64,000 nt of DNA from Pavona decussata (lineage: Eukaryota). A program made the position numbers and the translations under genes. The stretch spans positions 62,001 through 126,000 of the forward strand of contig CDRNST010000034.1 in assembly GCA_977016875.1 (NCBI GenBank). The letters are read 5' to 3'. The notes beneath the pieces are model-generated. The model searched no databases. It had not been told where the DNA came from and worked only from the letters and a program-made list of their open reading frames with translations. The first letter of the stretch is position 1. Each line of letters begins with the position of its first letter. Shown in pieces: positions 1-64,000 of the stretch.

Positions 1-128
1 ACTCCATCAAAAATCTAATCTTATTCTGTATAATATTAACCGACAATAACTAACATTAATATTAATAACTGTATTATTATTATTATTAAATGTGAATTAG
101 GGAGAAACGAAGACTCGGAAAAAAATCC

Positions 129-205
129 GAGTCCCAGATGGGATTTGAACCCACTACCCTCCGTGATCTAGTCGGATGCTCTAACCACTGAGCTACTGGA
201 GACTC
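129..205 (-). pseudogene. tRNA-derived repeat head (SINE-like), not a bona fide tRNA
   Basis: Minus strand has A box TAGCTCAGTGG and B box GGTTCAAATCC, an imperfect anticodon/acceptor stem and a downstream T run; embedded in a larger repeat (85-520). Confidence 0.6.
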
Positions 206-406
206 TATGGTGAGCAGGGGATCAAATTGTGGGTATCGACTGGAACCGCATCGCGCGGCTACACAGTCACGTACTGACTCATATGAACTCACTAACAGCA
301 TCGCGCTGTCACATTAAGGCATCTAGCACATATGAACTCACTAACAGCATCACGCTGTCACATTAAGGCATATCGAGATGCGTCCAACCAACCTCCCAAG
401 TGAGTG

Positions 407-520
407 TACTTAAAGGAGAAACAACAGCAACAACAGGATATTAAATGTGAATTAGGGAGTCTTCGTTTCTCCCTAATTCACATTTAGTATCCTGTTGTTG
501 TTGTTGTTTCTCCGTTAAGT
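407..520. repeat. ~50-bp inverted repeat (hairpin) whose inner arm also repeats 85-116
   Basis: tacttaaaggagaaacaacagcaacaacaggatattaaatgtgaattaggga ... tccctaattcacatttagtatcctgttgttgttgttgtttctccgttaagta. Confidence 0.75.
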
Positions 521-599
521 ATATTAATATTAATATTATTATTATTATTATCTATGTTTTTGTTATCTGTTAATAAAAAGAAAAAAAGAAAGGATGTCT

Positions 600-6500: not shown

Positions 6501-6730
6501 CAGTATGAAAAGAGTGAGGGCAATTTGTAGGGACAGACAAGGAAAGATGGTAAAAAGAGAGTAAAAAAGGCAAACAGAGCAAAAAACAACAGATTGAGAT
6601 CAGGCAGTAAGAGCAGAGTGGACGGACAACGAGGACAGAGTGAGTACAGACAGTAAGGAGAGAGTGAGGGTAGACAGTAAGGACAGAGTAAGGGTAGATA
6701 CAGGGAAAGGATGAAGACACGCAGTAACAG
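600..6730. repeat. 6-kb purine-rich compound minisatellite in an intron
   Basis: 51-bp unit at ~770-1325 (starts at 820, 871, 922...) and degenerate 24-bp units (gaggacagacagtaaggaaggagt / ...gacagagt) over ~1350-6700. Confidence 0.9.
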
Positions 6731-6842
6731 TTTCAACACTAAAGTTTGTTGAGCAGTGGAGGCAGTAAGCGCAGTGGAAGGGCAGGCATTTGAGGCAGTA
6801 AGAACAGCAGAAATGATAGCTAGTGGTAAAAGATTACATCAC

Positions 6843-25700: not shown

Positions 25701-28700
25701 CTTTTTAGTTTCAAGAAGCGACTTCTGCAAGATTTACTATTTTAGCAGTGACTTTAACCTTTACAAATTTTTCATTCAAGTGCATGTGCTTGAAGCAATT
25801 ACGCTTACAGTGATAATCTTAACAAATGAGATATATATTAATTTTTCACACACAAGTAAAGTTGATTAACAGGTTTCCTCTTGCATATCTCGAGACAAAG
25901 AAACAGCAAACAAAAATCCCAGAGAAAAACAAAAACAAGCAAAAACCTAAAGCCAAAAAAGGTTTCCAATAAAAACCTGCTGATCTGTCGGCTACCTCTT
26001 GTTTACTTTACTAAGAAGAAATAACATAAATTTACCTTCGCATGCAACTCCATCTCCAGTAAAACCAATGTTGCAAGTGCACTGGAAAGATCCCTTAGTA
26101 TTGTTACAATGCGCGTTGACGTCGCAGTTATCAGTATTCGTTTGGCATTCATCAATATCTAACAAGCGATAGCGAGTACTCAGTTAGTGACAAAAGCGTT
26201 TAAAGGGAAAGGAAATGCAAACATAGATTTATGGTGAGGGACATGAACACGTGAACTCTATTTAGCTGGTCAAGAGCATGGCGCTGTGTTAGATAATATT
26301 AAATGTATGATTATGATTCGTATCTTAAAGTTAACCTACCTAAACACGTGACTCCGTCTCCACTGTATCCTATGTGACACGTGCAATAAAACGATCCCTT
26401 GTTGTTTGTACAGTTAGCGTCATCATGGCAGTTGTGAGCATAATGTGAGTGAAGAGCTGTTAGTCCCTCTAGTGAGCACTCGTTAATGTCTAGCAAATCA
26501 AAACAGGGTAGCAAACCGTTATCATATTAGCCTGCACACTGGAAAGACTAAGACATCTTGCCCTTCGTTTCTGTACCGGTATTTTTCAGAATCAGTTTGA
26601 CCTCTGAAATCGCTACACCCAATATCAAATTATCTCCCTATATTTCGTGTCCAATAAATGCAAATATGTACATCGATGCTTCAGTCATGTGATAGGCAGA
26701 ACGTGGAACGGTTTTAAAGTGGAATGGTTTCATAGAATCCTCCCTCCCTGGCGTCTCCTATAAGGAATTGTTATCTAGAATGGTAAGGACAGGTAGGAAG
26801 TACAATTGCTCAACGAGTTTTGTCCTGGAAAACGAAAAGTAGAGGAAGAATACGAAGAAAGAAAACCCTGGAAAATATCATCATCAAGGACCTGGTTAGG
26901 AGGAAAATGGCATGGAATTATTTATGGCGTCCAGAAAAAAACAGGCCAATACGAGCAAACTGTCAGTACACTGTGCACCTGTGAAAGGGTCTGATGGGCA
27001 TATGTATATATATATATATCTTAAGCACAAGGGTCACTGCTAGTGTTCGCAAGGAGAAATCGACCTATGAACAGCCAACTAAATTTTTGAAACTCAAAAA
27101 GGAAAAATTCCTACCCTCGCAAATAACGCCATTTCCAGAGTATCCCGTATGACACGTGCAGTGGAATGATCCTTTGGTGTTCGTACAGTTGGCATCAGTA
27201 TGACAGTTGTCAGTGTTTGTGCCACACTCGTCGATATCTAAAAATAAGCAAGGAAAGTTTTGAAGAAAGGCAGAAACCAAAACATTCCTTAATCATTATA
27301 CCCATCGATCGCATATTTTAGTTCGGAATATAACATTTCCACATACCTCTGCACATGACTCCATCTCCGCTATATCCTAAAAGGCAGGTGCAGTAAAACG
27401 AGCCCTTTGTGTTGGTGCAAATGGAATCATTGTGGCAGTTATGTACCAAATATTTATAGAAGTCACTGATTCCATCAGGTTCGCACTCATTTACGTCTAC
27501 AAAAGCAAAGGACGTGTAAAGTCAGTTCATGGAGAGTGCGAACAAAAATAATAATAATAAAAAAGAATACATAAAAATTGACTAACCAACACAGGTGACT
27601 CCATTTCCAGAATAGCCATTGAGACAGGTGCAGTAGTACGATCCTTTAGTATTTGTGCAGTTGGCATCACCATGACAGTCATGTGCATAGTGTGTATGAT
27701 TGATAGACAGGGTATCCGAACTGCATTCGTTTATATCTGAAATAAGACATTCATTCATTTTCAACACTTTTTGAACAGGAAATGCTACTTCTTGCTCCTA
27801 AATTATTTTGACAATGTAGCCTAGTCATTGCCTTACCTACACACGTGACGCCATCTCCAGAGTATCCCGTATGACACGTGCAGTAAAAAGATCCTTTGGT
27901 GTTGGTACAGTTGGCATCAGAATGACAGTTATCTTTATCCGTTAGGCACTCATGTATGTCTTGCGAACAAAACAAAAAAAAAATAAAGAAAATAATATAA
28001 AATTTAGGTTCCATCTATTTCAAACTTAAGAGATAGTTACTCCGAGTTGTCAAGAATAAAGATGTTTTGCTACTGTTACTGACGCTTGTCTCGATTGCGA
28101 GTGGACAATTCTTTTGCCTGGAGAAAGAACCTGAATAAATTATTTTATCATCACGTACACAGCAATGCTACAGCCTGCAGGAGAGAGTTGATAACATCAG
28201 TCAAATAAATATTCAGCCGTTAGAGCTGTTCGAGGCCAAGAGGAACAGTGTATACCAAAATAACATTGACTCGAAAGCAGAGGTAAAGGATGAAAGATTA
28301 CGTTTCATTAGTATGGTAAGAGCAGATTAAAGTATCAGATATTACATGACAAACAAATTTTCACTTGCATCGAGTTATGTGTTATGGAATATACAAACTA
28401 TAAACTTAAGCGGGTGAGCATTTCCGTATTAAACCCGCGCANNNNNNNNNNNNNNNNNNNNNNNNNNNNNNNNNNNNNNNNNNNNNNNNNNNNNNNNNNN
28501 NNNNNNNNNNNNNNNNNNNNNNNNNNNNNNNNNNNNNNNNNNNNNNNNNNNNNNNNNNNNNNNNNNNNNNNNNNNNNNNNNNNNNNNNNNNNNNNNNTTA
28601 AGGTTAAAAAAGCGCGAAATGTATTTTACGCTATATTAAAAATGGATCAGGAGTTAGTTAGATTAGATGTGACGCAGTTTCGAAACCCACATTAACACTA

Positions 28701-31700: not shown

Positions 31701-34700
31701 ACAGTTGGAATCAGCATGACAGTTGTGTGTTCCGACGCTACATTCGTTAATATCTGAAAGACATGAACGAGTGTTGTGTTAGAGTCTGTTAGCCCAGATC
31801 CTCTACTCTAGTTAGCATTACTTTTTTCACGTGTTATTACTGACATCATCGAAATCATCGAAATCATCGCACAAAATTCTTTTACCTTCTACCAAAACCA
31901 AGATGTGTACTTACCTGAACACAGTACTCCATTTCCAGAGTATCCCGTATGACACGTGCAATAGAAGGATCCTTTAGTGTTTGAACAGTTGGCATCAGCG
32001 TGACAATTGTCCGTATCAGTGCGGCACTCCTCAATGTCTGTTGTAAAAACAAATTAAGAAAACCCCAATCGTTGCCATTGCCGCCAACGGCAAATGACGA
32101 TATGATCAAAGGATTAGATTAGGATTAGATCAAAGGATTAGCGACAGTATTAATTAGAATCGTTAGAACGTTAGTTGTTACAAGTAGTTAAACAAAAAAG
32201 TGTTTGTTATTGGTTATGGATCAGGAGTTAGTACGTCAGTTAATGTTTTATTAAAGTTGGCTTAATTTTTTTGCCATTCTAAGTAATCGGATACCACATG
32301 CTAAAATTTGCGTTACCGGAACAGATTTTAGCATAATTTATTTCAAATGATTTGTTTGTTCTTTGTTAGGATGACAAGTTGGTACTAGCAGTTTGACTAA
32401 GCATGTTCTTCATTTAGTCATTTACGTTGTCAAGTTGCGGTACCCGCTCACTTGGAATGCTGTTTTGCATACCTGTACAAGAGACACCATCCCCAGAATA
32501 CCCAGTAAGACACGTGCAAAAGAAAGAGCCCTTGGTATTGGTGCAGTTTGCATCGTCGTGGCAGTGGTGTCCAAGATGAGCATATTCCGGTGATAGTTGG
32601 TGCGAAAAACATTCATTGATATCTGTAGCAGAGTGAAATAATAATCGAATGAGATTAAATTTTGGACAAACATACATTAGCTTACATTAAACTGTTTGAA
32701 TTTTATTTTTGTCACTTGAAAGTTATGTCATGGCGACATTGAAAAGTTGTGCAAAACTCTTATCGCTAATTTTTATTTTAAGAGTAAAATAAATATGAAT
32801 AACCCTAGAGTAATAGCTCCCACGATAGTCAATTCATACCTATGCTACAGTTGATTGCTTTGTCCTGTCAACATTCATACGACCGATACTAATCGCTGCC
32901 TTTATTAATGTTCCAAGTAATGGAAGTACACATTGGAATTTAGCCTTTCTTATCTTTTGGATAAGAACATTAGTTAAGTTTATGTTTAGATTTATAAGGT
33001 CCCTACCACTAACAGGCCTTTCAGATACATTTCGCAGAAAGGAAGAAAAAGGTAGATAAAGTTTTTGTTACAAAGCAAACAAGTGCCATTAAGAAACATT
33101 CACGGCTAAAAATATCTAGTTATAATAGTAAAACCGATCGATTACCGTTGCAGAAAACGCCATTTCCGGAGTATCCTGTATGACAGGTGCAGTAGAACGA
33201 GCCTTTGGTATTGGTACAGTTAGCGTCGTCATGGCAATTATGGGAATAATGGCTGTGATGACTGGCCAACGCTCCAGCGTGGCATTCGCTAATATCTAAA
33301 TAAAAGGTAATATCGATAGAAAAGGTGTACGATTAGGAAGACAATGGTACGAATACGCATTGGGTGCAGTAAAAACCTTAACTGATTACACCAAAATACC
33401 TTCACACATGACTCCATCTCCAGAGAACCCCGTGTGACAGGTGCAGTAGAATGACCCCTTGGTGTTGGTACAGTTGGCATCAGTGTGACAGTTATGCGTT
33501 CCAGAAGTACACTCATCTATGTCTAAATAAAATTTAAATATTGTCCAAATTACCTTACAGTTCAATTAGTACTTTTTTTTAAATAATTAGTAATATTTAT
33601 GTACCTATGCACTCTCGTCCGCTTCCGTAGTAGCCCTCCTGGCAGCCGCAGTTGTAAGATCCTTTGGTGTTCGTACAGTTGGCATCCTCATGACAAATGT
33701 TGGCCAGGTGTTTATATTCAGAGGATAATCCAGATGGGTCGCATTCATTGATGTCTGTATAATAGAAATTTTAAATAAAATGTCCATAAAAACTTGTTTA
33801 ACAGATAAGCAAACGAAAGGAAGATATCGGATAGCATTACCAACACAAGTGACACCATCTCCAGAGTATCCAATATGACACGTGCAGTGGAAAGAACCCT
33901 TAGAGTTGGAACAGTTGGCATCAGCATGACAGTTGTGAGCAAGATGCTTGTAGTCATTAGATATCTGATCAGGGAAACACTCATCGATGTCTGAAATAAA
34001 ATGAAAGGGATAAAAGGTATCTTTTCCATTGAAAGTGTTTTTTCATGTTTTCAAAGTTGAAATGCGATAGAAACGTATCTCGTTATCACGGCAATGGCCT
34101 TTTCCATCCTTTTGTTCTCCTTTTACAAGTAAGTTTTGTGCACAAAATCTTAAGTACAATGATAGGATATTATCCTCTTACTGTAACGTTCAAGACGTTT
34201 TTCTCCAAATGGCCTTTTTACGCATTTAACAAAGGATATCATTTAAAGTATTTGAGCAATAGATTTGATGTTTTCACTTTAGGTTGCTTTTTAGGATAAG
34301 AATTTGGTTTTCCGGTATATTCACTGTGTAAAAGTTACCAATACATCTAAAAGGTATTAAATTGGGCTTTCAACCAAAGAATTTATTTGATAAGAAGGTT
34401 CTCTGCTCAATAGCTTTTATGCCCTCTATTGATGTAAACAACTCAAAATTCAGTGGATCCATCAATTTACCAACACACGCGATTCCATCTCCTGAGTATC
34501 CCGTATGACACGTGCAGTAAAATGATCCTTTAGTGTTTGAACAGTTGGCATCAGTGTGACAATTGTGAGCTAGATGACGGTACTGGTTAGGTATCTGATC
34601 AGGGAAACACTCGTCCACATCTGCAAGTAAAATTTTATTAGAATTACAAGATCCTCAATTATTTTTTGGCACGAGATGGCAAAGAAAATCAGGTGTGATA

Positions 34701-49700: not shown

Positions 49701-52700
49701 CAATTAGCGTCATCGTGGCAAATGTGAGCCAAGTGCTTATACCCAGAGGATAATCCAGACGGTCGACATTCGTCAACATCTATAACAAACGTAAATTCAC
49801 AAATGAACTTAAACATGACGCGTAAAGTTATTTACAATTTGGTCGAGTTTGAAGAGTGTTTAAATGGTTAGAAGGGGTTGTGGTTACAAATTCCTTTACG
49901 TCAGTTCAAAGATCGAAGTACTTGATTGGGTGCTATAAGTCAAGCTACTTGGAAGGACAATTCGAAGTTTTTGCATACCAGTAGAACAATAACAAAGACT
50001 CTATATCGTGACGCCTAAAAAGAAATCCTGACAATCTAGTTCAGTTTATAAATCTGCCGTTGTCTTAGCAGCAATATACACATCGATGACACCTGATTAA
50101 GGGACACGAAAGAATCACATAACCTACCTACACACGTGACTCCATCTCCAGAGTATCCTGTATGACACGCGCACTGGAATGACCCTTTGGTGTTAGTACA
50201 GTTGGCATCAGCATCGCAGTTGTGGGCAAGATCACGATAATCAATGGGTATCTTATCGGGAAAACATTCGTCCACATCTAGAATAAAGGAAGAATTGTGA
50301 CCAGCAAGTTAATTAGTATATATTTACACAAGTCATCAGTTGTTTGTTTGTGTATATCTGTGTGGGACAGTAGAAGGATCATCCTTCGAATGTTTTAGTG
50401 AGACTGCTACCTTTTAATGTCATCATATCAATATTTACAATCATTATAAATTGATGTGTACGGCATTGGATAAACCAGAAACAGGAAATATTTAAAGGGC
50501 CCTAGTCAGCCAAACCTTTGTTTTTGTTTATATGCGAGAGTTTGGCTATTATATTTTATTCGGAGCATGTCGAAATGGACGAAATCACTGTGAAACTACT
50601 AAAGATAGTGAAACATAATTTGAGGAACACAACTTACACTGAGTTAAGCAATAAGATTTCGCTTCACCATGCAATATCAATAATTTCGACGCCATCGAAA
50701 ATGGCGGAGGCTGACTAGGGTCCTTTAACACAACAATCATGTTTTTTATTGATTTCCAACACTAGGGACAATTTGTACGTTATGACCAGCTTTTACAAAG
50801 TAAGGGTTTATTGATGGTCAAAAGACGTATTTTTACCAATACACGTGACTCCATCTCCAGAATATCCCGTATGACACGTGCAGTAGAATGATCCTTTGGT
50901 GTTTGAGCAGTTGGCGTCAGCGTGGCAATTGTGAGCAAGGTGACGATATCCTTCAGATATGTGATCAGGAAAGCACTCGTTCACATCTGAAAGTGAACAG
51001 TGTCAACTTTAATTGAAGACTGTCTGGATTGATCATGAGCAAAATGAGTTCACTAGGAAAATGGATTGAGCCTTACCACTGTTAGTTTCTGTTTCACATT
51101 TTCATGTAGAATGTCATTCAAAGTTCCTCACTTACCGACACATGTGACTCCATCTCCTGAGTATCCCGTATGACACGTGCAGTAGAATGATCCTTTGGTG
51201 TTGGTACAGTTGGCGTCAGCGTGACAATTGTCCTTGTCTGTGATGCATTCTTCAATGTCTGGAATGCAGGTTTATCGTTATTTTGGTTTTGAATGTTGTA
51301 ACCGTCGTCGACATAAGAACTCTTCAGTTACATGTCATAGAACAAGAAGTCGGTCAACCTTGTATTTTACCGTTGTGTTTTTCTATTTGTTAGTATCCCG
51401 TCTGAAAGAGTGAATAATTCGTCAAAACTAAAAAAATAGGAAAAGATCAAATATTAATCATATGGATCAGGAGTTTCGGGCCTTGCAGAAAACCTGAATT
51501 ATTTACGTTTAACTATGTTGCTGTTTGGTGAGATCTTTTGACTCATTTGGTGACTGTTGTTGTAAACGTCGGCAATATGAGATATTTTAAAGATATGAAA
51601 TAAAATAGAGATACCTCTGACGACATGCGGATGAGTCCTTTATCACCATCACCTACCTACACAATCGACTCCATTACCAGAATAACCATTAAGGCACGTG
51701 CAGTAGAATGATCCTTTGGTATTTGAACAGTTTGCATCAGCATGACAGTTGTGAGCAAGATCACGATATTTATTAGGTATCTGATCAGGGAAACACTCAT
51801 CCACATCTAAAAGAAAAGCGAACAACAAAACACTTCGTTATTAGCATCACTGCAAGAAGAATGTGGGAAGATAAACTTACACTGTTATACTAGCTTCATT
51901 TATTTCAGTTGTGGGTACTGTATTCAAATATTTCACTAAATGTCTTTCCAAGGTTTATTCGAAGGAAGAAGTTATTTTCCTACTGCTCATCGTTGCATAG
52001 TTTAATTGTTTTTTGTCTTGTGTATCAACATTCCTTTCCTTTCAAAAAGAATCTATTACCTGAACAAATGACACCATCTCCAGAGTATCCCGTATGACAT
52101 GTGCAGTAGAACGATCCTTTGGTGTTGGTGCAGTTGGCGTCGTCAGAACAATTGTGGGCATAATGGCTGTGATGAGCCGCTAGATTTTTATCATCGCACT
52201 CGGTTATATCTTTTAAAGAAATGTAAAACAGGAGTTAGTGCCACTCATATGGCACCGCCTTCAACCCAAGAAAATCAACTGCTCCCAGGGGACCACTCAC
52301 CAACACATGTAACTCCGTCTCCAGAGTACCCCGTATGACACGTGCAATAAAACGATCCTTTGGTGTTGGTACAGTTGGCATCAGCGTGGCAGTTGTGAGT
52401 ACCTGACGTGCATTCATCAATATCTAGAACGGGAAATAAACAACGAATTCTTGTAAGAAACAATAGCTAAGTTGGCGTTTCTAGGAATGGAAATACTGGG
52501 TTAAGATGTTGTATTGGTTCGCGTGATAAGCATTATGGTGCGTAAAACGTTCGAAATGCATGTTTTCATTTAACGTTTGAGTAGATCACAAAATTGATTA
52601 GATTGGTGTCCTATCTCAATTTGTCTTGTTGCTAATATAAATTAAAAGATGTTGCCTAACTTGCAGTCGTCCCTGAGAAAAAATAATGCTGTGCTCCTGC

Positions 52701-55700
52701 TTTGATTTGCACCCCTCAAAGGACTTTAATTAGACTAGTAGTAATCAAAAATTAGGGAGTTCGTTCAATGATCTCGATTTCAGGCTCTCTCTCCTTTGCC
52801 AAGTTGGTGATGATGTCATCCGCCCCTGCAAAATCTGCAGGGGATGCCAGATACACGTCCCAAGATTCATTCATTCGTTGCTTGTCCCATACAATCTCGA
52901 CTAGAAACTGTATTAAGAGTGTGTTCTTTCTACGTCGAACGCAATACTTTCCTAGTTAATGTAGTTTTGCAATTCTCAACTGTAAATATAAATTCTAAAT
53001 ATTTGGTTAGTTTTGTATTGACAGCTCTAGCGAATATAGTTCTCTAATACCTAGGAGATATTTCGCTTTAGATCTCAAATTTAAAGATAGTTTTTACCGT
53101 TACAATCTTTTCCATTTCCAACATAGCCCTGTTGGCAGCCACAGTTGTAAGATCCTTTGGTGTTTTTGCAGTTGGCATCAGCATCACAAAGGTTGACCAA
53201 GTGCCGGTGGTCACTGGATAATCCAGATGGATCGCATTCGTTGATGTCTGTTAACAAAGAATAGTATTGGTGAAAGGAGTAAGTTCTGTTTTTCTTCCCA
53301 AAATATGGTGCGTTTAAGGATTTTGTTTACCTTTTTCATTATTTTTTAAGTTATTTCCATTTTGAATAGTTTGTTTCGCTTCCCGAAACATGCTTTGAAA
53401 TCAAATTCAGTTGTTCGAATAAGCTTTTAAAAAAGCTAACGTCATGTGAAAGAATAATTACCAACACACGTGACTCCGTCTCCAGAGTAACCAATATGAC
53501 ACGCACAGAAGAAAGATCCTTTGGTGTTGCTACAGTTGGCATCAGCGTGACAGTTGTGTGCAAGATGACGATATTCATGAGAAATTTGACCAGGAAGGCA
53601 CTCGTTAACATCTGAGGCAAGAAAAACAAAGGACAGAAATCACTCTGTTTTCTTATTACTTTATGTACCTTCGTTGTTCTCTTCTTGCTTTAAACATTAA
53701 TATAACATTAAAATTATTCTTCCTGTTGCTTGTGTTGCGTCGGGTAATGGAGAATTTTCAACGTGTTTAAGGCAACAGAATTGTACCAGATGCCAGTGTG
53801 GCGGTGATTTCCTGGCTCAATTACGTTACTGCAAGAAAAGTAGTTTACTCACACCTACCTACACACGTGACTCCATCTCCAGAGTATCCCGTATGACAGG
53901 TGCAAAAGAAAGATCCTTTGTTGTTGGTACAGTTGGCATCAGCATGGCAATTGTGAGCAAGATGACGATAATCATCTGATATCTGGTCAGGGAGGCACTC
54001 GTTTACATCTGCATTTAACAATTGAAACATTACAATAAGACACCTTTGTTTGAAACAAGTTCAGTGAATAGAGCTCGACACATCTGAATTAAGATGAAGG
54101 TTAATGAAAGATGTTACTGGTATTTTCTAAGCTGAGGTAAAAGAAAGCCTCGTAATTTGTTTATTTACCGACACACGCGACTCCGTCTCCAGAGTATCCC
54201 GTATGACAGGTGCAGTTGAAAGATCCTTTGGTGTTGGTACAGTTGGCGTCAACATGGCAGTTGTGTGCTCCAGTAGCACATTCCTCTATGTCTGAAAATA
54301 TGAAGAGAACGGAAAAGTATATCATATCTTTTTTAAAGAGCTTTTTTTGCTCCTCAAAAGTAAATGGAAGTAGACGAATTTCACGACATTCATTTGTCTA
54401 GTCGAGTTGAGATTTGCATGCGTGTCCATTCCGCTAATCCTGTCACGGATGGAAAGAAAACAAAGTAGTTAAAAGGTATTTTAATCCAGCCTGGGAATCT
54501 ACAGGTACTCATATGTAGGTATTGCTGTGAAGGTAAATTTGTTTCCTTGCTCAAAGCGTACTTATAGTACCTTTAGTACCGTAGCACGATATTTCGATGG
54601 AAGCCGTAGAAAATAACGTTTGTCCAGTAGGCATGTTTAGGTTCGAAGGTTGTTGTAGTAAAAGTGTAAGGTCGTGTTCCATTCAAATATCATTCAAAGT
54701 TTGTTTTCTCGACAAGTCACAGCGGTGCTTAATTTCCTTATTAACAAATCGTCAAGGGCGTGATGCCATAAGATATCATCCAGAAAATTGATATCTTATG
54801 ATGTCCCTTATTGGCAGGTCTATTATTGGCAAGTTTTTTTTTTTTTTTTTACCGCAAGCCATATATGGTAAAACGTTTACTCAACATCTCGGATTTGGAT
54901 CAGGAGTTCTCTGGCTTTAAGAAAGTAAGATTTCCTTGTACCTGTCTGTTTACGTACCCACACACGTAATTCCATTACCAGAATAACCATTTAAACAAGT
55001 GCAGTAGAAAGATCCTTTTGTGTTACTACAGTTGGCATCAACGTTGCAGTTGTGAGCAAGATGACGATATGCACCAGGTATTTGATCAGGGAGACATTCG
55101 TTTACATCTAAAGAGCAAAATAAATATGTCAATATAAATGATGTAGAGTGCAAGAACACTCATAAAAGAAAGATTATACGTTTTCCAGGTTCATGCCTTC
55201 CATCTATCCTATTGTGGAACAAACATTAAGCTATTTCTTTTCGTTTTCTAAGAACTCAAATTTTCTAACTCGCCTGCCAATGAAATCGTCTGAACTCAAA
55301 TTCTATTTGCTCTTTCAAGAAATCTCTTAAGACGAAAATTATTACATAAATATGAACAATATTAAATCTACCGGGTATCTTTTAGCTTCTTTGTTTGAAA
55401 TCGACTTTACGCCTTGTGATTAATTGTAATCATACTCTAATCATACTTAGTTTGGGGATACCTTACCACACATAAATTTTCTAGTTTATTGTAGGCCTCT
55501 TTGTCACCTTTTCTTTACATTTTTGTATACATAATCGATTTATTGTAAAATAGGTGAAAAGTGAACTAATTTCCTACCAACACAATCAACACCGTTTCCA
55601 GAGTATCCTGTATGACATGTGCAGTAGAATGATCCTTTGGTGTTGGTACAATTGGCATCAGTATGACAGTTGTGAGAATAATTGCTGTGATGCGGCAATA

Positions 55701-58700: not shown

Positions 58701-61700
58701 ACAAATAAAGGACAAGAACAGCTGAAACAGAATTTCTGTCACTGTTGTTTTCATTCAAAGTATCTATATAAGTGGTATTGTGTCAAATTTGGCGCACTGC
58801 CCAGTGTTAAAGTGGAGAAGGCATCAAGGTGACTGGGAACACTCAAAATATAATGAAAATATAAGGTTACATTTCCAAGTTGAAATTTATTTATGAAAAG
58901 TTTTTTTTTTTTTTGTAACTTTTACATTCTATCGCAGGGGTTTTAACTTAAGGCCAAACAGCATTCAAGAAAGTAGAATTAACCGTACGCTCATGAGAAA
59001 GAGTATATATTGACGAAAAGATATGTTTGATTTCTAATGTCTTGAACAAATATCTGATAACTAAGGATTTGGAAAATAGTCTAAAAAAAGCTAGCAAGAA
59101 TACAAGTATGATTAGTTAAAACTTAGAAAAAACGAGTCACCCTCACCAATCCACCTTTGCCTTCTCTCTTTTTATTATGTACTGTACATGGGCTTTAACA
59201 GCATGGATCAGGAGTTCCTTTGATTGTAGAATATGTCATTCTACGTTTGATATGCTTGTTTGGAACGTATACCTTTCATGGCCACAGCATAATTTCTGAT
59301 AATGGCGCATGGCATCTAAAAATCGGCGCTGTTTTGTTACAGAGGAGCAAAATGAAATATTTTAAGATCATTTACTTTTTTACAAAGGTGATGATTTAGT
59401 GATATCTCTCGTGCCACGACTTGCGTCCTTTTTTGAAATCACCTACCTACACAATCCACTCCATTACCAGAATAACCATTTAAACAAGTACAGTAGAATG
59501 ATCCTTTGGTGTTGGTACAGTTGGCGTCAGTATGACAGTTGTGAGCAAGACCACGATATTCAGCTGGTATCAGTTTGGGAAAACATTCATTCACATCTAA
59601 AACGAAATGCGCACAAAATGCTTAATTATTAACTATTGTAATATGCTTGTTCGAAGAAAAATCCAAAGAATCATTGTTATTAATAGAAGTGCTCTATTTA
59701 AACTTTGTTGAACTGGCCGATTTGCAGACTTTCCATCATACGTTCAGTAAGTTTTATAAATGAATAATACCTGCACAAATAACTCCATCTCCAGAGTATC
59801 CCCTATGACACGTGCAATAAAACGATCCTTTGGTGTTGGTGCAGTTGGCGTCAGCATGGCAGTTGTGGGCATATTTGCTGTGATGGGGAGCTAGGTTTTT
59901 ATCATCACACTCTGTTATATCTTTGACAAATGAAAACGGCAATAATTACAATGGAGGACCAAATCTAATTTGTTAAATGCAGTTTACATCTAAAAACATT
60001 GTCTTCACATATATAACATCAAGGCAGTCGTGCAGTAACGTGATGAGTTGATAATAGTGCAACTTACCAACACACGTGACTCCATCCCCCGAGTATCCCG
60101 TATGACAGGTACAATAGAATGATCCCTTGGTGTTGGTACAGTTGGCATCAGCATGGCAGTTATGTGTTCCAGCTGAACATTCATCGATATCTACATCGCA
60201 AAAAAGTACGTTACGAGCCAAAAGTGGCTGGAACTTGTTTTAAGAAACGGCTTTATACTTGCTTAAGAAGTAAAATTAGCGTTATGGATACTCTTAATGA
60301 TGTTCCATCTCTATCTTCAATATATTGAAATCGATGATAGTTGTAGTTTTAACCAACGATACCTGTAGTAAAATCTTGAATATTCCTATACGTGTCCTAC
60401 ATTCTGATCAGGCATACGCCATGGATTCGTCATTTCATTGACTTCGTAAATCGGCAGCAGGAAGGGCAACTGTTAAGGGTGTCAATTTTCATGTAAAACC
60501 CAGTTGAGCTGAGGACGTTTTTTACTACTCGTTGTCTTCCTTAAAACTTTTCTTCGTTCCAATAAAAGACACGTTTTACAACAAATTCAATATAACCTTT
60601 AGGAGAATCCTGTAAATATAACATTGATATGCTAAAATCCGCTGGGCTTAAAGCCGCCAGAAACAACGGGTTGCATAGAAAGGCATTGGAAAAATGACTA
60701 TTGGCAACCTCAAACTAATCGTATTTGGATAGTTTCTGGTGCCGAAAAATTCTCATACCCAAAGCATCTTTTGAAAACTATGAATCAGCTCCACAAAAAC
60801 CCTTGGGAGAGTCCATGGAGTGATCTTCACAACCTTTCTAGATGCTATTCCGTTATTGAGATAGAGAGGCAGTGTCGACTGAGTTTATCAATCTCTTGCA
60901 CTACTCTTGCAATGTCCAGGGCGTCACAGACGATGTTGTAAAACAACTTTCGTTTTGTGTCCTACCATTACAATCTCTTCCATGTCCAGAGTATCCCACC
61001 AGACATGTGCAGTAATAGGATCCTTTGGTGTTTGTACAGTTGGCGTCATCGTGACAAATATGAGCCAAGTGCTTGTACTCAGAGGACAATCCAGACGGGT
61101 GACATTCGTTGATATCTGAAGGGATAAATAAAATAAATATTAAGAACGTATAGAAAATGTATCGTGATTTGAGTAATTAAGCGAATTCGAGGACGTCGAC
61201 CTTATGCTCATTTCGTTTCAATCACGAGAACCTGAGAAATTCATTTGTTTAGTAATACTGATTTATTACGACCATTAACAAATTCGTCAGTTTCTAAAGA
61301 ATAAAAAATGAAATCATTTACTACCTCTTGATCTTGAAAATGAAAACCTTGTCTCCTGGTTACTGAGATATCGTTGCTAAATTATCGTCCCCGTAATACG
61401 CCAATTTCGATGTATTAAAATTCTAACTTGGCTCTGAGGCTGAGGCGAATAATAATGAAAAAAATCAAACCTGAACCCCAATGAAATTTCTTTCGTTTTG
61501 TTTTTCTAAATAAGAATTTTAGACCTTTTAGAGGGTGGACACATAATTTAAGAACATCTCGTAATTACCAACACATGTGACTCCGTCTCCTGAGTATCCC
61601 GTGTGACACGTACAGTAGAATGATCCTTTGGTGTTTGAGCAGTTGGCATCAGTGTGGCAATTGTGAGCAAGATGACGATATTCGTTGGATATTTGATCGG

Positions 61701-63944
61701 GTAAACATTCATCCACATCTAAGATGGAAAAAGTGGAGACATGATACGTTGAACAAGATCTCCTGATTAGTAGCGCGTAGCTTTTTGGTGTTATTTCTAA
61801 ACTAACTTTATAGCAAAAACACAGTGTGTGGGTTGTACCTATAGGGATCAGCATTCCGTTCGCGTTTCGTTTATACATAATAAAGTTTTTGCTTATTATA
61901 AATACCTAATTAGTTTATTTAAGTTTCGTTTCAAAACGTTTAAAGCTCAAAAGAGAAACCCACGTACCAACACACATGACTCCATCTCCAGAATATCCTG
62001 TTTGACAAGTGCAGTAGAAGGACCCTTTGGTATTTGAACAGTTAGCATCAGTGTGACAGTTATGAGCAAGAGGGCGGTACTCGTTAGACATCTTATCTGG
62101 AAAACACTCATCGACATCTGAAAAAATAAAGAGGAAAGACTGTCACACAATTCCGCGGACATGAAGTTCACCTAAATTTTTTTTATTTTTTTTTAATGGA
62201 ATTCGTTTCTTAAGTCATCGAGTTAAAAATAGAAGTTGTATGATGATTCCAACGGCTATACCGGATGGGACTTTTTTTTCGTCTGTGATGGGTCTCACCA
62301 TGCTTTTTGTGCCACGTGGTTCATAACGCACACATCTATATTTAACTCACCTGCACACGTGACGCCGTCTCCAGAGTATCCCGTGTGGCACGTGCAGAAG
62401 AATGACCCTTTGGTGTTGGTACAATTAGAATCACTGTGACAGTTGTCTTTCTCTGTGGCACATTCCTCGATGTCTAGAATGGGAGAGCGTAATTTTCTAT
62501 TTGGCACTGTTTTATTTTGTTACCTAAGCAAGACCAGGTTTGTGATCTCAACTCTGATCTGTAAACTCTGTCGCAAGTCTCAGTAACGCTAAACAAAACT
62601 GAATGTAATGCCAGATTCGCCTGATTCCGTTTGAAAATTGCAAATGATGACAGCACGGAAGCACAGAAGGCAAATAACTACCGTCGCTAATCTTTTCAGC
62701 TCACAAAGAAAGCCATAGTTCCTGTGCGAATAAGATGGAAACTTGGCTCCTATACAAATTTTCGAAACCTTTTTGTTTTCAAGATGCGTCATAGAACGAA
62801 ATGCCCTTGCTAACGCTCCTTGAGGGGAATAGAGACTCCACTGCTACGCTGACAGTCCAATTGAGATTCCACAAGTTCAGTTCATGTCGATACGCATGTA
62901 ACCGTGACTGCATTTCTGTTGGTAACTACCTTGAAGGGATGCCTTCCTAGTATTGACTTGTTTTACAAAAAAAAATAATAACTGATTTGCTTTAATGAAG
63001 CCATTTTGTTCATCAGTTGTAAATGACTTCAAAAATTTGGTTTTATAAACCGTGTTTCCAAAACAGGTTTATCAACCTTCGTAAATGTATAGTCATGGGA
63101 ATATCAAGAAATATGGATCAGGAGTTTCATGCTTTAAATGTACGAGAAAAATATAAATATTTTCTTGGATCAGTGGAGGCACAAGGTTGCACTCATAGCA
63201 GCATGTTATATGAATGATGGTTGGACAATAAGTACAGCTGTTACATTTAATTTTGAATTTCTGCATGTATAGAAAACCCATCAATACTGCTAAACGAACT
63301 CCTTACGTCAAGACGGCCTTGCAAATGAGGCGAGATATAATACTAAAATTCCAGAGTAAACTAATGTATTCGCCCCTTGTCAAGTTATAAGGTTAAAATT
63401 AAACTGAGTTGAAATTCAAAACTAAACAAATCTACCACATTAATAGCCACAATTAAGTTAGAATGGTATTTTTTAAGTTGTAGCACGACCCCACAAGCTA
63501 TTGCGTTGAAACTCATCGTGTATAAATGAAAGTTATGGTATGATATGGTAGATAGATGATATTGAACCCATTGGGAACTTTAACCCCACTGATGCGAAAC
63601 ATCTTTTCGTTTCTCATATCTCAGTTTAGAATCAGCCATACCCAATGGCATATGAAAATCAGCAGATAAACACAAACCATTAGAAAGTAGAAATACAGAT
63701 TGAAGTCGATTGTATGGAAGAAATTGAGACAGTTTTCAGAACCGCGCGGTACACTTTGAAGCTAAAGGTTGGCAGAGTACCCCCGGCCACCTACCTACAC
63801 AATCCACACCATTACCAGAATAACCATTTAAACACGTGCAGTAGAAAGATCCTTTGGTGTTGGTACAGTTGGCATCAGCGGGGCAATTGTGAGCAAGATG
63901 ATGATATTTGTCAGGTATCTGATCAGGAAAACACTCGTCCACAT
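6843..63944 (-). CDS. Giant adhesion GPCR (EGF-TM7/latrophilin-like architecture): >=63 cbEGF - SEA - 2 EGF - HRM - GAIN (with WSC-like insert) - GPS - 7TM; multi-exon, 5' end and C-terminal tail outside the window
   Basis: About 87 exons with AG/GT (one GC) boundaries that join in consistent phase without stops. GPS motif WLGNGC..VCHCSHL|TNFALL; secretin/adhesion-type TM motifs ([47 protein letters not shown]). Confidence 0.93.
8611..8848. mobile_element. MITE (PIF/Harbinger-like ends)
   Basis: ttaa|ggccgatttaga ... tctaaatcgacc|ttaa inverted termini. Confidence 0.55.
11651..12492 (-). CDS. GPS (autoproteolysis) exons
   Basis: Exons 12492-12440 ([17 protein letters not shown]) and 11774-11651 ([41 protein letters not shown]). 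Confidence 0.9.
13100..18019 (-). CDS. HRM and GAIN domain exons
   Basis: HRM 18019-17906 ([17 protein letters not shown]) and 17569-17466 ([16 protein letters not shown]). GAIN 17314-17111, 16802-16734 ([13 protein letters not shown]), 16553-16403, 16092-15928, 14457-14379 (FYKNLEELL), 13241-13100 ([12 protein letters not shown]). Confidence 0.85.
13585..13856. mobile_element. MITE-like inverted-repeat element
   Basis: tagagcggtttctaattcagtgtcgtaaa ... tttcgacactcaaatgaaaatagctcta imperfect TIRs; internal ccaatca repeats. Confidence 0.55.
14967..15257 (-). CDS. 291-nt phase 1-1 exon encoding a WSC-like cysteine domain, located inside the GAIN region
   Basis: cag|GA...G|gtaag boundaries; translation [43 protein letters not shown]...[20 protein letters not shown] follows the WSC-type pattern (GCF-D, C..C, FAVQ-G-WC, GG..AN-VY). 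Confidence 0.75.
18094..19572 (-). CDS. Two membrane-proximal EGF exons
   Basis: 19572-19459 ([27 protein letters not shown]) and 18219-18094 ([28 protein letters not shown]). Confidence 0.88.
18464..18778. repeat. Diverged local duplication (~110-130 bp)
   Basis: agatcgattcaacagaacaaa...tggataaagc.aaaatagcaactt occurs at ~18464 and ~18662. Confidence 0.7.
19666..20690 (-). CDS. SEA-like domain (3 exons)
   Basis: Exons 20690-20575, 20052-19988 and 19811-19666 splice in frame to ..[47 protein letters not shown].., which follows the SEA pattern. Confidence 0.7.
21097..27959 (-). CDS. cbEGF exons 51-63 (membrane-proximal, more divergent part of the array)
   Basis: Phase 1-1 exons: 27837-27959, 27587-27736, 27347-27496, 27115-27237, 26340-26489, 26036-26158, 25489-25611, 24831-24953, 24116-24238, 23493-23615, 22940-23062, 22111-22233, 21097-21222; D-I/L-D/N-E-C and C-x-N-x4-F/Y-x-C-x-C consensus. 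Confidence 0.9.
22316..22879. repeat. Near-perfect 281-bp tandem duplication (2 copies)
   Basis: cggataaaaaggaacgatg starts at both 22316 and 22597; the copies are nearly identical. Confidence 0.9.
28442..28597. other. Assembly gap (N run)
   Basis: 156 N bases. Confidence 0.99.
28642..28655 (-). promoter_or_regulatory. Conserved intronic 14-mer, copy 8 (after EGF exon 50)
   Basis: atggatcaggagtt on +; function inferred only from periodic conservation. Confidence 0.6.
28756..32037 (-). CDS. cbEGF unit 7 (exons 44-50; variant exon order)
   Basis: 31915-32037, 31631-31753, 30690-30839, 30310-30459, 29591-29740, 29314-29463, 28756-28905. Confidence 0.9.
32216..32229 (-). promoter_or_regulatory. 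Conserved intronic 14-mer, copy 7 (after EGF exon 43)
   Basis: atggatcaggagtt on +; overlaps TACTAAC in gene sense. Confidence 0.6.
32473..34855 (-). CDS. cbEGF unit 6 (exons 37-43)
   Basis: 34733-34855, 34471-34620, 33841-33990, 33605-33754, 33400-33522, 33146-33295, 32473-32622. Confidence 0.9.
36788..41552 (-). CDS. Spliced transposase (~1165 aa) of the Sola3-like element
   Basis: Predicted exons 41552-41159, 40538-40406 and 39758-36788 join in frame (..GIGS|PICGKCR..; ..LRNR|LLNETF..). Putative catalytic motifs [25 protein letters not shown]; Cys/His clusters; C2H2-like CPEEGC..H..H; SAP-like C-terminus. Confidence 0.8.
40732..40988. mobile_element. Tc1/mariner-type MITE nested in transposase intron 1
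   Basis: TA|ccgtaaaattccgaaaataagcccc ... ggggcttattttcggaattttacgg|TA: perfect ~25-bp TIR, TA TSD, internal ataagccc repeats. Confidence 0.85.
40991..41143. mobile_element. Short palindromic MITE-like repeat
   Basis: cacgtgac..ggcggccatgttggtggtcaa ... ttgacccccaccatggccgcc..gtcacgtg imperfect inverted arms. Confidence 0.6.
43137..43150 (-). promoter_or_regulatory. Conserved intronic 14-mer, copy 6 (after EGF exon 36)
   Basis: atggatcaggagtt on +. Confidence 0.6.
43244..47815 (-). CDS. cbEGF unit 5 (exons 30-36)
   Basis: 47693-47815, 47351-47500, 46888-47037, 46536-46685, 45966-46088, 44517-44669 (153 nt), 43244-43393. Confidence 0.9.
43528..44441 (+). mobile_element. pogo/Tigger-type non-autonomous element carrying a HIRAN-like ORF fragment
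   Basis: TA|cagtcaactct..taaggcggacacc ... ggtgtccgcttagagagagttgactg|TA; subterminal repeats tgtccgccttagagagag; ORF 43791-44150 contains [26 protein letters not shown]. Confidence 0.75.
48176..48189 (-). promoter_or_regulatory. Conserved intronic 14-mer, copy 5 (after EGF exon 29)
   Basis: atggatcaggagtt on +. Confidence 0.6.
48232..51258 (-). CDS. cbEGF unit 4 (exons 23-29)
   Basis: 51136-51258, 50837-50986, 50128-50277, 49630-49779, 49283-49405, 48891-49040, 48232-48381. Confidence 0.9.
48543..48590 (-). ncRNA. Minimal hammerhead ribozyme motif (Penelope-like element type)
   Basis: Minus strand gattcgct-CTGATGA-aggacttacgctc-GAAA-cgtc-agctctcgaatc: core boxes present, palindromic ACGT in place of stem III, flanks pair as stem I (gattcg/cgaatc). 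Confidence 0.6.
50496..50724. mobile_element. TTAA-targeting MITE (Kolobok-like termini)
   Basis: TTAA|agggccctagtcagcc ... ggctgactagggtcct|TTAA. Confidence 0.75.
51462..51475 (-). promoter_or_regulatory. Conserved intronic 14-mer, copy 4 (after EGF exon 22)
   Basis: atggatcaggagtt on +. Confidence 0.6.
51657..54291 (-). CDS. cbEGF unit 3 (exons 16-22)
   Basis: 54169-54291, 53859-54008, 53462-53611, 53098-53247, 52301-52423, 52060-52209, 51657-51806. Confidence 0.9.
54895..54908 (-). promoter_or_regulatory. Conserved intronic 14-mer, copy 3 (after EGF exon 15; 13/14 match)
   Basis: ttggatcaggagtt on +. Confidence 0.6.
54958..58159 (-). CDS. cbEGF unit 2 (exons 9-15)
   Basis: 58037-58159, 57422-57571, 56837-56986, 56582-56731, 55840-55962, 55578-55727, 54958-55107. 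Confidence 0.9.
59203..59216 (-). promoter_or_regulatory. Conserved intronic 14-mer, copy 2 (after EGF exon 8)
   Basis: atggatcaggagtt on +. Confidence 0.6.
59447..63944 (-). CDS. cbEGF unit 1 (exons 2-8) plus the last exon of the preceding unit (exon 1 of the window)
   Basis: 63795-63944; 62351-62473, 61968-62117, 61569-61718, 60966-61115, 60068-60190, 59771-59920, 59447-59596. Confidence 0.9.
63113..63126 (-). promoter_or_regulatory. Conserved intronic 14-mer, copy 1 (after EGF exon 1)
   Basis: atggatcaggagtt on +. Confidence 0.6.
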
Positions 63945-64000
63945 CTGAAAGGAACAGTTCAAGATTATTATTAGTTATTCACACTTAAGAATACAAATAA

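What the first reader, a model, noticed from the sequence alone, without database searches (positions are those of the whole stretch)
28642..63126. An invariant 14-nt intronic element marks every 7th EGF exon: candidate selector/boundary system for modular splicing of a giant adhesion-GPCR ectodomain
Seen: ATGGATCAGGAGTT (pre-mRNA AACUCCUGAUCCAU) at 63113, 59203, 54895 (13/14), 51462, 48176, 43137, 32216 and 28642. These fall after EGF exons 1, 8, 15, 22, 29, 36, 43 and 50: exactly one per 7 exons, always in the same paralogous intron, and I saw no full copy elsewhere. The host introns differ greatly in length and look unalignable by eye, and the motif sits ~40-670 nt from the donor. It therefore appears to be kept by selection rather than passively copied. 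All EGF exons are phase 1-1, so skipping any block keeps the frame. Established: Dscam1 exon clusters use repeated intronic selector sequences that compete for one docking site. Inference: competing pairing with a single docking site (or binding of one trans factor) could loop out whole 7-exon blocks and give isoforms whose stalk differs in ~332-aa steps. I found no full complementary docking site in the window by eye; it could lie in the 5' part of the gene beyond position 64000. Alternatives are an RBP or small-RNA site, a DNA-level factor site, or a recombination signal.
Basis: partly seen in the sequence, partly recalled or inferred. Interest (0 to 1): 0.92.

Follow-up and report, generated by a model that had tools for sequence, protein, structure and literature searches.

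The report
Docking-and-selector RNA pairing in coral receptor
A giant coral cell-surface receptor gene carries one short intron sequence near its start and ten perfectly or nearly complementary copies spaced along its repeated EGF exons. The arrangement is conserved across corals and matches the RNA-pairing "docking site/selector" system known from insect Dscam1, so it could set the length of the receptor's stalk in steps of seven EGF domains.

Summary
The gene lies on the minus strand and encodes an adhesion GPCR: CUB, 79 phase-1/1 EGF exons, GPS, 7TM.

- **Selectors.** AACUCCUGAUCCAU (pre-mRNA sense) occurs once per 7-exon unit, after exons 9, 16, 23, 30, 37, 44, 51, 58 and 65, always before a 123-nt "B" exon. 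Eight of these copies are in the window. An 11/14 copy lies in intron 5.
- **Conservation within the gene.** Apart from one microsatellite, it is the only intronic 9-14-mer shared by six or more introns. Flanks are at random identity (0.31).
- **Genome count.** The 602-Mb genome holds 13 exact copies, against about 4.5 expected by chance.
- **Docking site.** One exact reverse complement lies 9.9 kb beyond the window end, 176 nt after the exon-5 donor. It is the only such site in the gene.
- **Other corals.** Two corals reached through the CUB exon have the same docking 14-mer at +179/+180 of the orthologous intron. Seven more metagenome contigs have it at +166 to +171. Three other assemblies keep the selectors in introns that otherwise do not align.

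Best reading: a Dscam-type competing RNA pairing that joins exon 5 to one of ten B-type exons, skipping nested blocks in frame.

No RNA evidence could be obtained, so the splicing outcome is inferred. It is a new variant of a known kind.

The parts
63113..63126 (-). Selector copy (14/14) in intron 16, 667 nt after the donor of A-type exon 16 and 640 nt before B exon 17
59203..59216 (-). Selector copy (14/14) in intron 23
54895..54908 (-). Selector copy (13/14; last base A instead of U) in intron 30. The same variant occurs in two other coral assemblies, in an intron after an exon with the same ending (..NGVTCM), so the unit is probably the same one.
51462..51475 (-). Selector copy (14/14) in intron 37
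48176..48189 (-). Selector copy (14/14) in intron 44
43137..43150 (-). Selector copy (14/14) in intron 51. This intron is 8.4 kb and contains a 1008-aa ORF.
32216..32229 (-). Selector copy (14/14) in intron 58
28642..28655 (-). Selector copy (14/14) in intron 65. This intron also holds the 156-N gap at 28442-28597, which was left untouched.
62351..62473 (-). B-type 123-nt exon 17 (DIEEC...). It stands for the acceptor exons that follow each selector. The others are exons 24, 31, 38, 45, 52, 59 and 66, at 58037-58159, 54169-54291, 51136-51258, 47693-47815, 34733-34855, 31915-32037 and 27837-27959.
63795..64000 (-). Placeholder at the window's upper edge (A-type exon 16 at 63795-63944, then the window end) for parts of the system that lie BEYOND the window on the same contig and strand. 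Coordinates are window-equivalent; add 62000 for G000:C34.
- First periodic selector (14/14): 67808-67821, in intron 9, 37 nt after the exon-9 donor.
- Selector 0: 72783-72796, in intron 5, UUGCUCCUGAUCCA, 11/14 complementary plus an upstream UGCG that can pair with the docking flank CGCA; 312 nt before B-like exon 6.
- DOCKING SITE: 73877-73890, AUGGAUCAGGAGUU in pre-mRNA sense, the exact reverse complement of the selectors; 176 nt after the exon-5 donor and the only such site in the gene.
- Conserved ~120-nt hairpin: 73895-74014, ending 5 nt before the docking site.
- EGF exon 5: 74067-74189.

Best explanation
The 14-nt elements are selector sequences, and one upstream intronic element is their common docking site. 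This is a competing long-range RNA-RNA pairing system inside the pre-mRNA of a giant adhesion GPCR.

The docking site sits 176 nt after the exon-5 donor, at the foot of a conserved hairpin. It can pair with only one of ten selectors at a time, with predicted duplex energies of about -24 to -30 kcal/mol.

- Pairing with the selector inside intron 5 brings the exon-5 donor next to exon 6, giving the full-length form.
- Pairing with a later selector loops out exons 6-9, 6-16, ... 6-65 and brings the exon-5 donor next to the B-type exon that follows that selector.

All EGF exons are phase 1/1, so each choice stays in frame. The constant head (CUB plus EGF 1-5) would sit on a stalk that shrinks in 7-EGF (332-aa) steps after a first 4-exon step. 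The looped-out blocks could also be released as circular RNAs.

Shown: the sequence elements, their complementarity, the uniqueness of the docking site, their placement, and their conservation across corals. Inferred: that the duplex forms in vivo, and what it does to splicing.
For: 1. Uniqueness and non-randomness.
- The whole 602-Mb genome has 13 exact copies (about 4.5 expected by chance). Nine lie in this gene, eight in sense and one in antisense, and one lies in a truncated paralogue.
- An exact antisense 14-mer somewhere in about 90 kb of pre-mRNA is expected about 3e-4 times.
- No second docking-like site exists, even with G-U pairs and one mismatch allowed.

2. Placement fits the model.
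- The docking site lies downstream of exon 5 and upstream of all selectors.
- Every selector precedes a B-type exon, and exon 6 is B-like too.

3. Selection within the gene.
- The motif is the only intronic 9-14-mer shared by 6 or more introns.
- Flank identity is 0.31, and four-fold sites between units are 54-69% identical.
- The selectors' invariant block coincides with the complement of the docking site.

4. Conservation across corals.
- Two assemblies reached independently through the CUB exon (74% and 66% aa identity) carry the exact docking 14-mer 180 and 179 nt after the orthologous donor.
- Seven metagenome contigs have the exon-5 orthologue and the docking site at +166 to +171.
- Three further assemblies have the same 7-exon units, with the selector only in the A-to-B intron.
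- blastn between species finds only 22-37-nt matches centred on the selector.
- Introns 4 and 6 do not align, while the first 215-265 nt of intron 5 are 78-82% identical.

5. Variation fits a helix.
- Most changes sit at the duplex ends (positions 1-3 and 14).
- One internal change, C to U in L039 and L042, keeps a G-U pair. One copy in L028 has two disruptive internal changes.

6. Presentation of the docking site.
- It is single-stranded at the base of a conserved hairpin (z = -2.4).
- One hairpin pair covaries between A-U and G-C across eight sequences.

7. Precedent.
- Dscam1 exon 6 has a docking site downstream of constitutive exon 5, and looping-out of exons by intron pairing is established (PMC11802352).
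- Duplicating one arm of an intronic stem along with the exons produces competing selectors (PMC6071210).
Against: - There is no RNA-level evidence. The four metatranscriptome runs were held only as contigs, barely covered the exons, and showed no exon-exon joints.
- There is no compensatory covariation between docking site and selectors, because the docking site is invariant in all sequences seen.
- The seven metagenome contigs were found with the docking sequence itself, so they say nothing about species in which it differs.
- Selectors lie closer to the upstream donor (37-667 nt) than to the downstream acceptor (179-8282 nt). This suits back-splicing as well as linear skipping.
- One A-to-B-type intron in another coral lacks a selector, and one copy elsewhere is degenerate, so not every unit needs one.
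- A DNA-level or protein-binding role for the 14-mer cannot be excluded from sequence alone.
Confidence: 0.6

Rival explanations
1. The same docking-selector pairing exists, but its main product is circular RNA. The inverted complements in intron 5 and in introns 9, 16, 23 and so on bring the donor of an A-type exon to the acceptor of exon 6. This releases exon 6-to-N circles, with little or no effect on the protein.
For: Selectors sit close to the A-exon donors: 37, 48, 41, 92 and 99 nt in five of nine introns. Intron pairing that loops out exons is regularly accompanied by back-splicing (PMC11802352).
Against: The docking site is held at a constant 166-180 nt from the exon-5 donor in all ten docking-bearing sequences examined, including the window. 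It lies 1.4 kb or more from the exon-6 acceptor. An intron-internal selector 0 serves no purpose for circles. No back-splice data exist either way.
Confidence: 0.12
2. The 14-mer is a binding site for a sequence-specific protein, either an RNA-binding splicing factor or a DNA-binding factor such as a boundary or enhancer protein. The factor marks each unit, and the antisense copy is simply one more site read on the other strand.
For: The element is short and invariant, occurs once per unit, and is conserved across species. A DNA-binding factor would read either orientation.
Against: An RNA-binding protein would not recognise the antisense copy. A DNA site gives no reason for exactly one inverted copy at a fixed distance from the exon-5 donor, for the G-U-compatible C-to-U variant, for changes clustering at the duplex ends, or for the extra CGCA/UGCG complementarity with selector 0.
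Confidence: 0.12
3. The copies are passive relics of the tandem duplication that built the array, or a fragment of a dispersed repeat or a product of gene conversion, and have no function.
For: The units did arise by tandem duplication, which copied the element along with the exons (model in PMC6071210). The recent paralogue on contig C241 keeps a copy together with its conserved flanks.
Against: Flanks are at random identity while 13-14 nt are invariant in 9 old units. There are only 13 copies in 602 Mb. Gene conversion would homogenise the flanks as well. The element is kept in other corals in introns that do not align. An exact antisense partner exists and is conserved.
Confidence: 0.03

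Closest known systems
Dscam1 exon-6 cluster docking site and selector sequences (arthropods)
   Same: One docking site lies in the intron just downstream of a constant exon. Many selectors, one per variable unit, are all complementary to it, so only one duplex can form at a time. Both elements are the most conserved parts of their introns (PMC11802352; PMC6071210).
   Different: Here each selector heads a block of seven exons (four for the first block), not a single exon. The geometry predicts nested in-frame deletions that change repeat number, not mutually exclusive choice of one exon. No repressor of the unselected exons is implied. The host is a cnidarian adhesion GPCR. The core duplex is 14 bp. 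Nothing has been tested at the RNA level.
Origin of competing RNA structures by duplication of one arm of an intronic stem-loop (Ivanov and Pervouchine 2018, PMC6071210)
   Same: Intron 5 still holds a docking site and an internal selector, forming a stem within one intron. The selector arm recurs once per tandemly duplicated unit, as that model predicts.
   Different: The duplicated unit is a 7-exon module. The model was proposed for mutually exclusive exons in bilaterians.
Exon looping-out by complementary intronic sequences: Alu pairs, and the TERT intron-6 38-bp repeats (PMC11802352; PMC3948165, abstract seen)
   Same: Pairing between distant introns removes the exons in between, sometimes several at once, and can yield circular RNAs.
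   Different: Those cases use long or repeated, recently acquired elements and a single pairing option. Here a short single-copy docking site, conserved across corals, faces ten alternative partners.
Competing long-range structures in ATE1 (PMC7797038, abstract seen)
   Same: Conserved intronic elements compete for a common partner over long distances, up to an ultra-long-range structure.
   Different: ATE1 has two mutually exclusive exons and five elements. The coral gene has an ordered series of ten selectors along a repeat array.

Membership tests
Docking-site/selector competing RNA pairing (Dscam1 exon-6 type) | A single docking site in the intron downstream of a constant exon | tested here: met
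   One antisense 14-mer lies 176 nt after the exon-5 donor. No second site exists in the gene, even with G-U pairs and one mismatch allowed.
Docking-site/selector competing RNA pairing (Dscam1 exon-6 type) | Several selectors all complementary to the same docking nucleotides, so that pairings exclude each other | tested here: met
   Ten selectors were found: eight 14/14, one 13/14 and one 11/14 with an added 4-bp extension. All cover the same 14 nt, with predicted duplex energies of -24 to -30 kcal/mol.
Docking-site/selector competing RNA pairing (Dscam1 exon-6 type) | One selector associated with each alternative unit, upstream of the exon it selects | tested here: met
   Each selector precedes a B-type 123-nt exon. 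The unit is a 7-exon block, not a single exon.
Docking-site/selector competing RNA pairing (Dscam1 exon-6 type) | Docking site and selectors conserved between species within otherwise diverged introns | tested here: met
Docking-site/selector competing RNA pairing (Dscam1 exon-6 type) | Compensatory covariation between docking site and selectors | tested here: inconclusive
   The docking site is invariant in all ten sequences. The only signals are one G-U-compatible C-to-U change and changes clustered at the helix ends.
Docking-site/selector competing RNA pairing (Dscam1 exon-6 type) | Alternative splicing outcome tied to the pairing: isoforms observed, with disruptive and compensatory mutations shifting them | not testable with these tools
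   The one reads call returned only metatranscriptome contigs with almost no exon coverage. Mutagenesis is bench work.
Mutually exclusive exon cluster | Exactly one exon of the cluster is included in every mRNA | not tested
   The geometry (selector before every 7th exon, all exons phase 1/1) predicts nested block skipping, not one-of-N choice. There are no RNA data.
Adhesion GPCR | Long adhesive ectodomain followed by a GPS motif and a secretin-type 7TM | tested here: met
   Pfam matches: CUB 4e-26, EGF_CA/EGF_3, GPS 5.5e-11, and 7tm_2 1e-4 above its cut-off. There are 79 EGF exons.

The most novel reading that the evidence does not exclude
Stony corals use a Dscam-like docking/selector RNA switch, the first outside Bilateria. 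It does not pick one exon out of many. It sets how many 7-EGF modules an adhesion GPCR carries, giving up to ten nested isoforms with the same CUB-EGF head on a rigid stalk of graded length: a genetically encoded, splicing-adjustable molecular ruler.
Probability: 0.4. Interest if true: 0.9.

Novelty: new variant of a known kind. Interest (0 to 1): 0.85.

Why it matters
Docking/selector pairing is the textbook case of RNA structure directing complex alternative splicing, and it has mainly been described for mutually exclusive exons in arthropods and a few other bilaterian genes. Two literature searches here turned up no cnidarian case.

A conserved system in corals would show that this logic is older or more easily evolved than thought. 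It would also show that it can count repeat modules, not only choose among variants.

It gives a concrete mechanism for how giant repeat-array surface proteins could vary their reach. It also makes a sharp, cheap prediction: ten specific exon 5-to-B junctions, which any coral long-read transcriptome can test.

Tried and rejected
- **Dispersed repeat.** Rejected. There are 13 genomic copies, and the docking region is single-copy.
- **Passive relic or gene conversion.** Rejected on flank identity and cross-species data.
- **Known RNA family at the docking hairpin.** The only Rfam hit (mir-1260b, E 0.27) is far below its threshold and lies elsewhere.
- **RNA evidence.** Four coral metatranscriptome runs laid on a 5.8-kb stretch (exon 8 to exon 5) gave only short contigs, mostly on an intronic inverted-repeat element. 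There were no exon joints, so this was uninformative.
- **Representative-protein search with the CUB exon.** It was swamped by multi-CUB proteins and was of no use.
- **Search with the exon-5 ORF.** It found only unrelated EGF genes. One fetched locus (L027) was not an orthologue, and one hit was not on record.
- **Paralogous arrays in this genome, sought for covariation.** None found. Only a truncated paralogue on C241 exists, with one selector and no docking site.
- **CUB-exon hits L033, L035 and L036.** These were other paralogues, or loci that end before exon 5.
- **Conserved 127-nt block before selector 0 as a poison exon.** Not pursued. It aligns only with one other species.
- The N gap at 28442-28597 was left as it is.

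Full report
**1. What is in the window**

The window is G000:C34:62001-126000 of a 602-Mb coral genome. Public runs that hold the stretch are labelled coral metagenome. The gene lies on the minus strand.

- A splice-aware scan found 79 EGF exons of 123-153 nt. All start after AG, end before GT, and are phase 1/1. They run from window-equivalent 76541 down to 18094.
- Upstream lies a CUB exon. Downstream lie a GPS motif and 7tm_2 exons (Pfam). The product is a giant adhesion GPCR.
- Exons were always searched singly by reference.
- From exon 10 to exon 65 the exons form 7-exon units (B, C, D, E, F, G, A types; 996 nt = 332 aa). Exons 6-9 form a shorter 4-exon unit.

**2.

- One search finds the 14-mer at the eight stated places, seven exact and one 13/14. 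Nothing else matches at up to 2 mismatches, against 0.49 expected.
- In pre-mRNA sense it reads AACUCCUGAUCCAU. It lies in the introns after exons 16, 23... 65, always before the 123-nt B exon.
- A ninth periodic copy lies just past the window end, after exon 9, at window-equivalent 67808.
- A k-mer census of all introns shows that, apart from an (AATC)n microsatellite, pieces of this motif are the only 9-14-mers shared by six or more introns.
- Thirteen columns are invariant in the nine periodic copies, while ungapped flank identity is 0.31-0.32.
- Four-fold codon sites of paralogous exons are 54-69% identical, so the units are old.
- The genome holds only 13 exact copies on both strands, about 4.5 expected by chance.

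Passive inheritance, gene conversion and a dispersed repeat are therefore excluded.

**3. The predicted docking site exists**

- Of the 13 genomic copies, one is the reverse complement on the same contig, at C34:135877-135890, which is window-equivalent 73877-73890.
- It lies in intron 5, 176 nt after the donor of EGF exon 5. In the transcript this is upstream of every selector. In pre-mRNA it reads AUGGAUCAGGAGUU.
- A search of the whole gene for sites able to pair with the selector, with G-U pairs and one mismatch allowed, returns only this site.
- An exact antisense 14-mer in about 90 kb is expected about 3e-4 times.
- The surrounding 268 nt are single-copy in the genome.
- Intron 5 also holds a tenth, weaker selector (CUCCUGAUCCA, 11/14) 312 nt before exon 6, which is itself B-like. 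An upstream UGCG in this selector can pair with the CGCA that follows the docking site.
- Predicted duplex energies for all ten pairings are -24 to -30 kcal/mol.

**4. Conservation in other corals**

Orthologues reached through the CUB exon:
- ORF-level protein searches followed by contig look-ups gave loci from other assemblies.
- Two of them, reached independently of the motif, carry the exon-5 orthologue followed by the exact docking 14-mer 180 and 179 nt after the donor. They are L034 (CUB 74% aa identity) and L037 (66%).
- L034 also keeps selector 0 before exon 6.

Extent of intron conservation:
- In three-way and pairwise comparisons, the first 215-265 nt of intron 5 are 78-82% identical.
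- Introns 4 and 6 give no alignment at all.

Metagenome contigs:
- A scan of metagenome contigs with the 24-nt docking pattern returned seven coral-host contigs (L038-L044).
- Each has an exon-5 orthologue and the docking site at +166 to +171.
- These were found with the docking sequence itself, so they show breadth, not independence.
- L039 spans the docking site, a selector 0 that reads AACUCCUGAUUCAU (its C-to-U change keeps a G-U pair), six exons, and then a canonical selector before a B exon.

Selectors in other assemblies:
- Three other assemblies (L028, L029+L031, L030) show the same 7-exon units.
- The selector, or a variant with one or two changes, occurs only in the A-to-B intron.
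- blastn between the window's selector introns and theirs finds only 22-37-nt matches centred on the motif.

Pattern of variation:
- About two dozen selector copies were seen in all. Most changes fall on positions 1-3 and 14, the ends of the duplex.
- One copy in L028 is internally degenerate.
- One A-to-B-type intron in another species has no copy at all.

**5. Local context of the docking site**

- A conserved imperfect hairpin of about 120 nt ends 5 nt before the docking site.
- The docking site is unpaired in the minimum-energy fold (z = -2.4).
- With eight sequences, RNAalifold keeps the hairpin, and one pair alternates between A-U and G-C.
- RNAalifold also proposes a weak, fully invariant pairing of part of the docking site with an upstream element that contains UGCAUG. 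This could be a local lock, but it has no covariation support.
- No Rfam family matches.

**6. Mechanism**

The arrangement is that of Dscam1 exon 6: a docking site downstream of a constant exon, and many mutually exclusive selector pairings (PMC11802352). Its likely origin follows the published duplication model, in which one arm of an intronic stem is copied together with the exons (PMC6071210).

The difference is that each selector heads a 7-exon module. Pairing would loop out exons 6-9, 6-16, ... 6-65 and bring the exon-5 donor next to the following B exon. Because every exon is phase 1/1, the result is a nested, in-frame series. The CUB-EGF1-5 head is kept, and the stalk ranges from 74 down to 14 EGF domains.

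Looping-out is known to be accompanied by back-splicing. Circular RNAs of the looped blocks are therefore a possible by-product or an alternative main product.

I put the functional RNA pairing at about 0.6, and the specific linear block-skipping outcome somewhat lower.

**7. What is missing**

- RNA evidence is missing. The only reads call laid four metatranscriptome runs, all held as contigs, on window-equivalent 68600-74400 (5801 letters, within the operators' limit). Exons were hardly covered and no exon joints appeared.
- In one run a 107-nt contig with no differences (depth 14) covers the docking site and the 3' arm of the hairpin, while exon 5 is not covered. This is unexplained and could be pre-mRNA or DNA.
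- No compensatory double changes could be seen, because the docking site never varies.
- The 156-N gap in intron 65 was left untouched.

**8. Verdict**

The system is a new variant of a known kind, pending RNA-level proof.

Note on coordinates: the docking site, selector 0, the first periodic selector, the hairpin and exon 5 lie beyond the window's upper end. They are given as window-equivalent coordinates (add 62000 for G000:C34). In the parts list they are described under one placeholder entry at 63795-64000.

Noticed in passing
window 36791-39814 (minus strand), inside intron 51: An uninterrupted 1008-aa ORF with only a weak HeH/LEM match lies in this intron, which is 8.4 kb. The A-to-B intron that appears to correspond in another coral (L030, judged by exon similarity) is 499 nt. 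It is probably a transposon-derived insertion.
   Followed up: partly
window-equivalent 69909-70058 (G000:C34:131909-132058), intron 7: A type-C/D EGF exon-like stretch is interrupted by a TGA, so it is a decayed pseudo-exon. In coral L034 an intact exon of this type directly follows exon 6. The (AATC)n microsatellite lies nearby, at about 69050-69400.
   Followed up: partly
G000:C241:53157-59283 (loci L020, L021): A truncated paralogue with seven EGF exons, resembling exons 1-3, two C/D-type exons, 9 and 10. It has one selector whose flanks are also conserved, and no docking site. L032, from another assembly, carries identical EGF exon products preceded by a CUB exon 94% identical to this gene's.
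   Followed up: partly
window-equivalent 72867-72993, intron 5: A 127-nt block about 85% identical to coral L034. It is preceded by two TACTAAC branch-point-like motifs and an AG, and followed by GTAAAT. In the gene's phase it has an immediate in-frame TGA in both species. It may be a poison or terminating cassette exon that the pairing of docking site and selector 0 would loop out. It was not found in the L039-type corals.
   Followed up: partly
window-equivalent 74029-74034, intron 5 at +33 to +38: UGCAUG is invariant in all eight aligned corals. From my own knowledge, this is the hexamer bound by Rbfox-type splicing regulators. RNAalifold pairs its surroundings weakly with part of the docking site.
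   Followed up: no
window-equivalent 73853-73994 (L025:5254-5395): In metatranscriptome run X1 only, short contigs cover the docking site and the 3' arm of the hairpin (one 107-nt contig, depth 14, no differences). Exon 5 has no coverage. The cause is unknown: a stable intron fragment, pre-mRNA or DNA carry-over.
   Followed up: no
window-equivalent 70346-70733 (L025:1747-2134), intron 7: An inverted-repeat (MITE-like) element with very high summed contig depth (20,000-33,000) in all four metatranscriptomes. Rfam gives only sub-threshold miRNA-precursor-like hits.
   Followed up: partly
window 1-7000: A strongly strand-asymmetric, repetitive stretch (GC skew up to 0.57, AT skew up to 0.68), with long overlapping Cys/Leu/Ser-rich open frames on the minus strand. 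It lies downstream of the 7TM exons. Its nature was not examined: a cytoplasmic-tail repeat or a satellite.
   Followed up: no
window 14935-15291 (minus strand): The exon noted earlier as WSC-like gives only a sub-threshold Pfam WSC match (E 5e-4, 20.7 bits against a cut-off of 27.8).
   Followed up: partly
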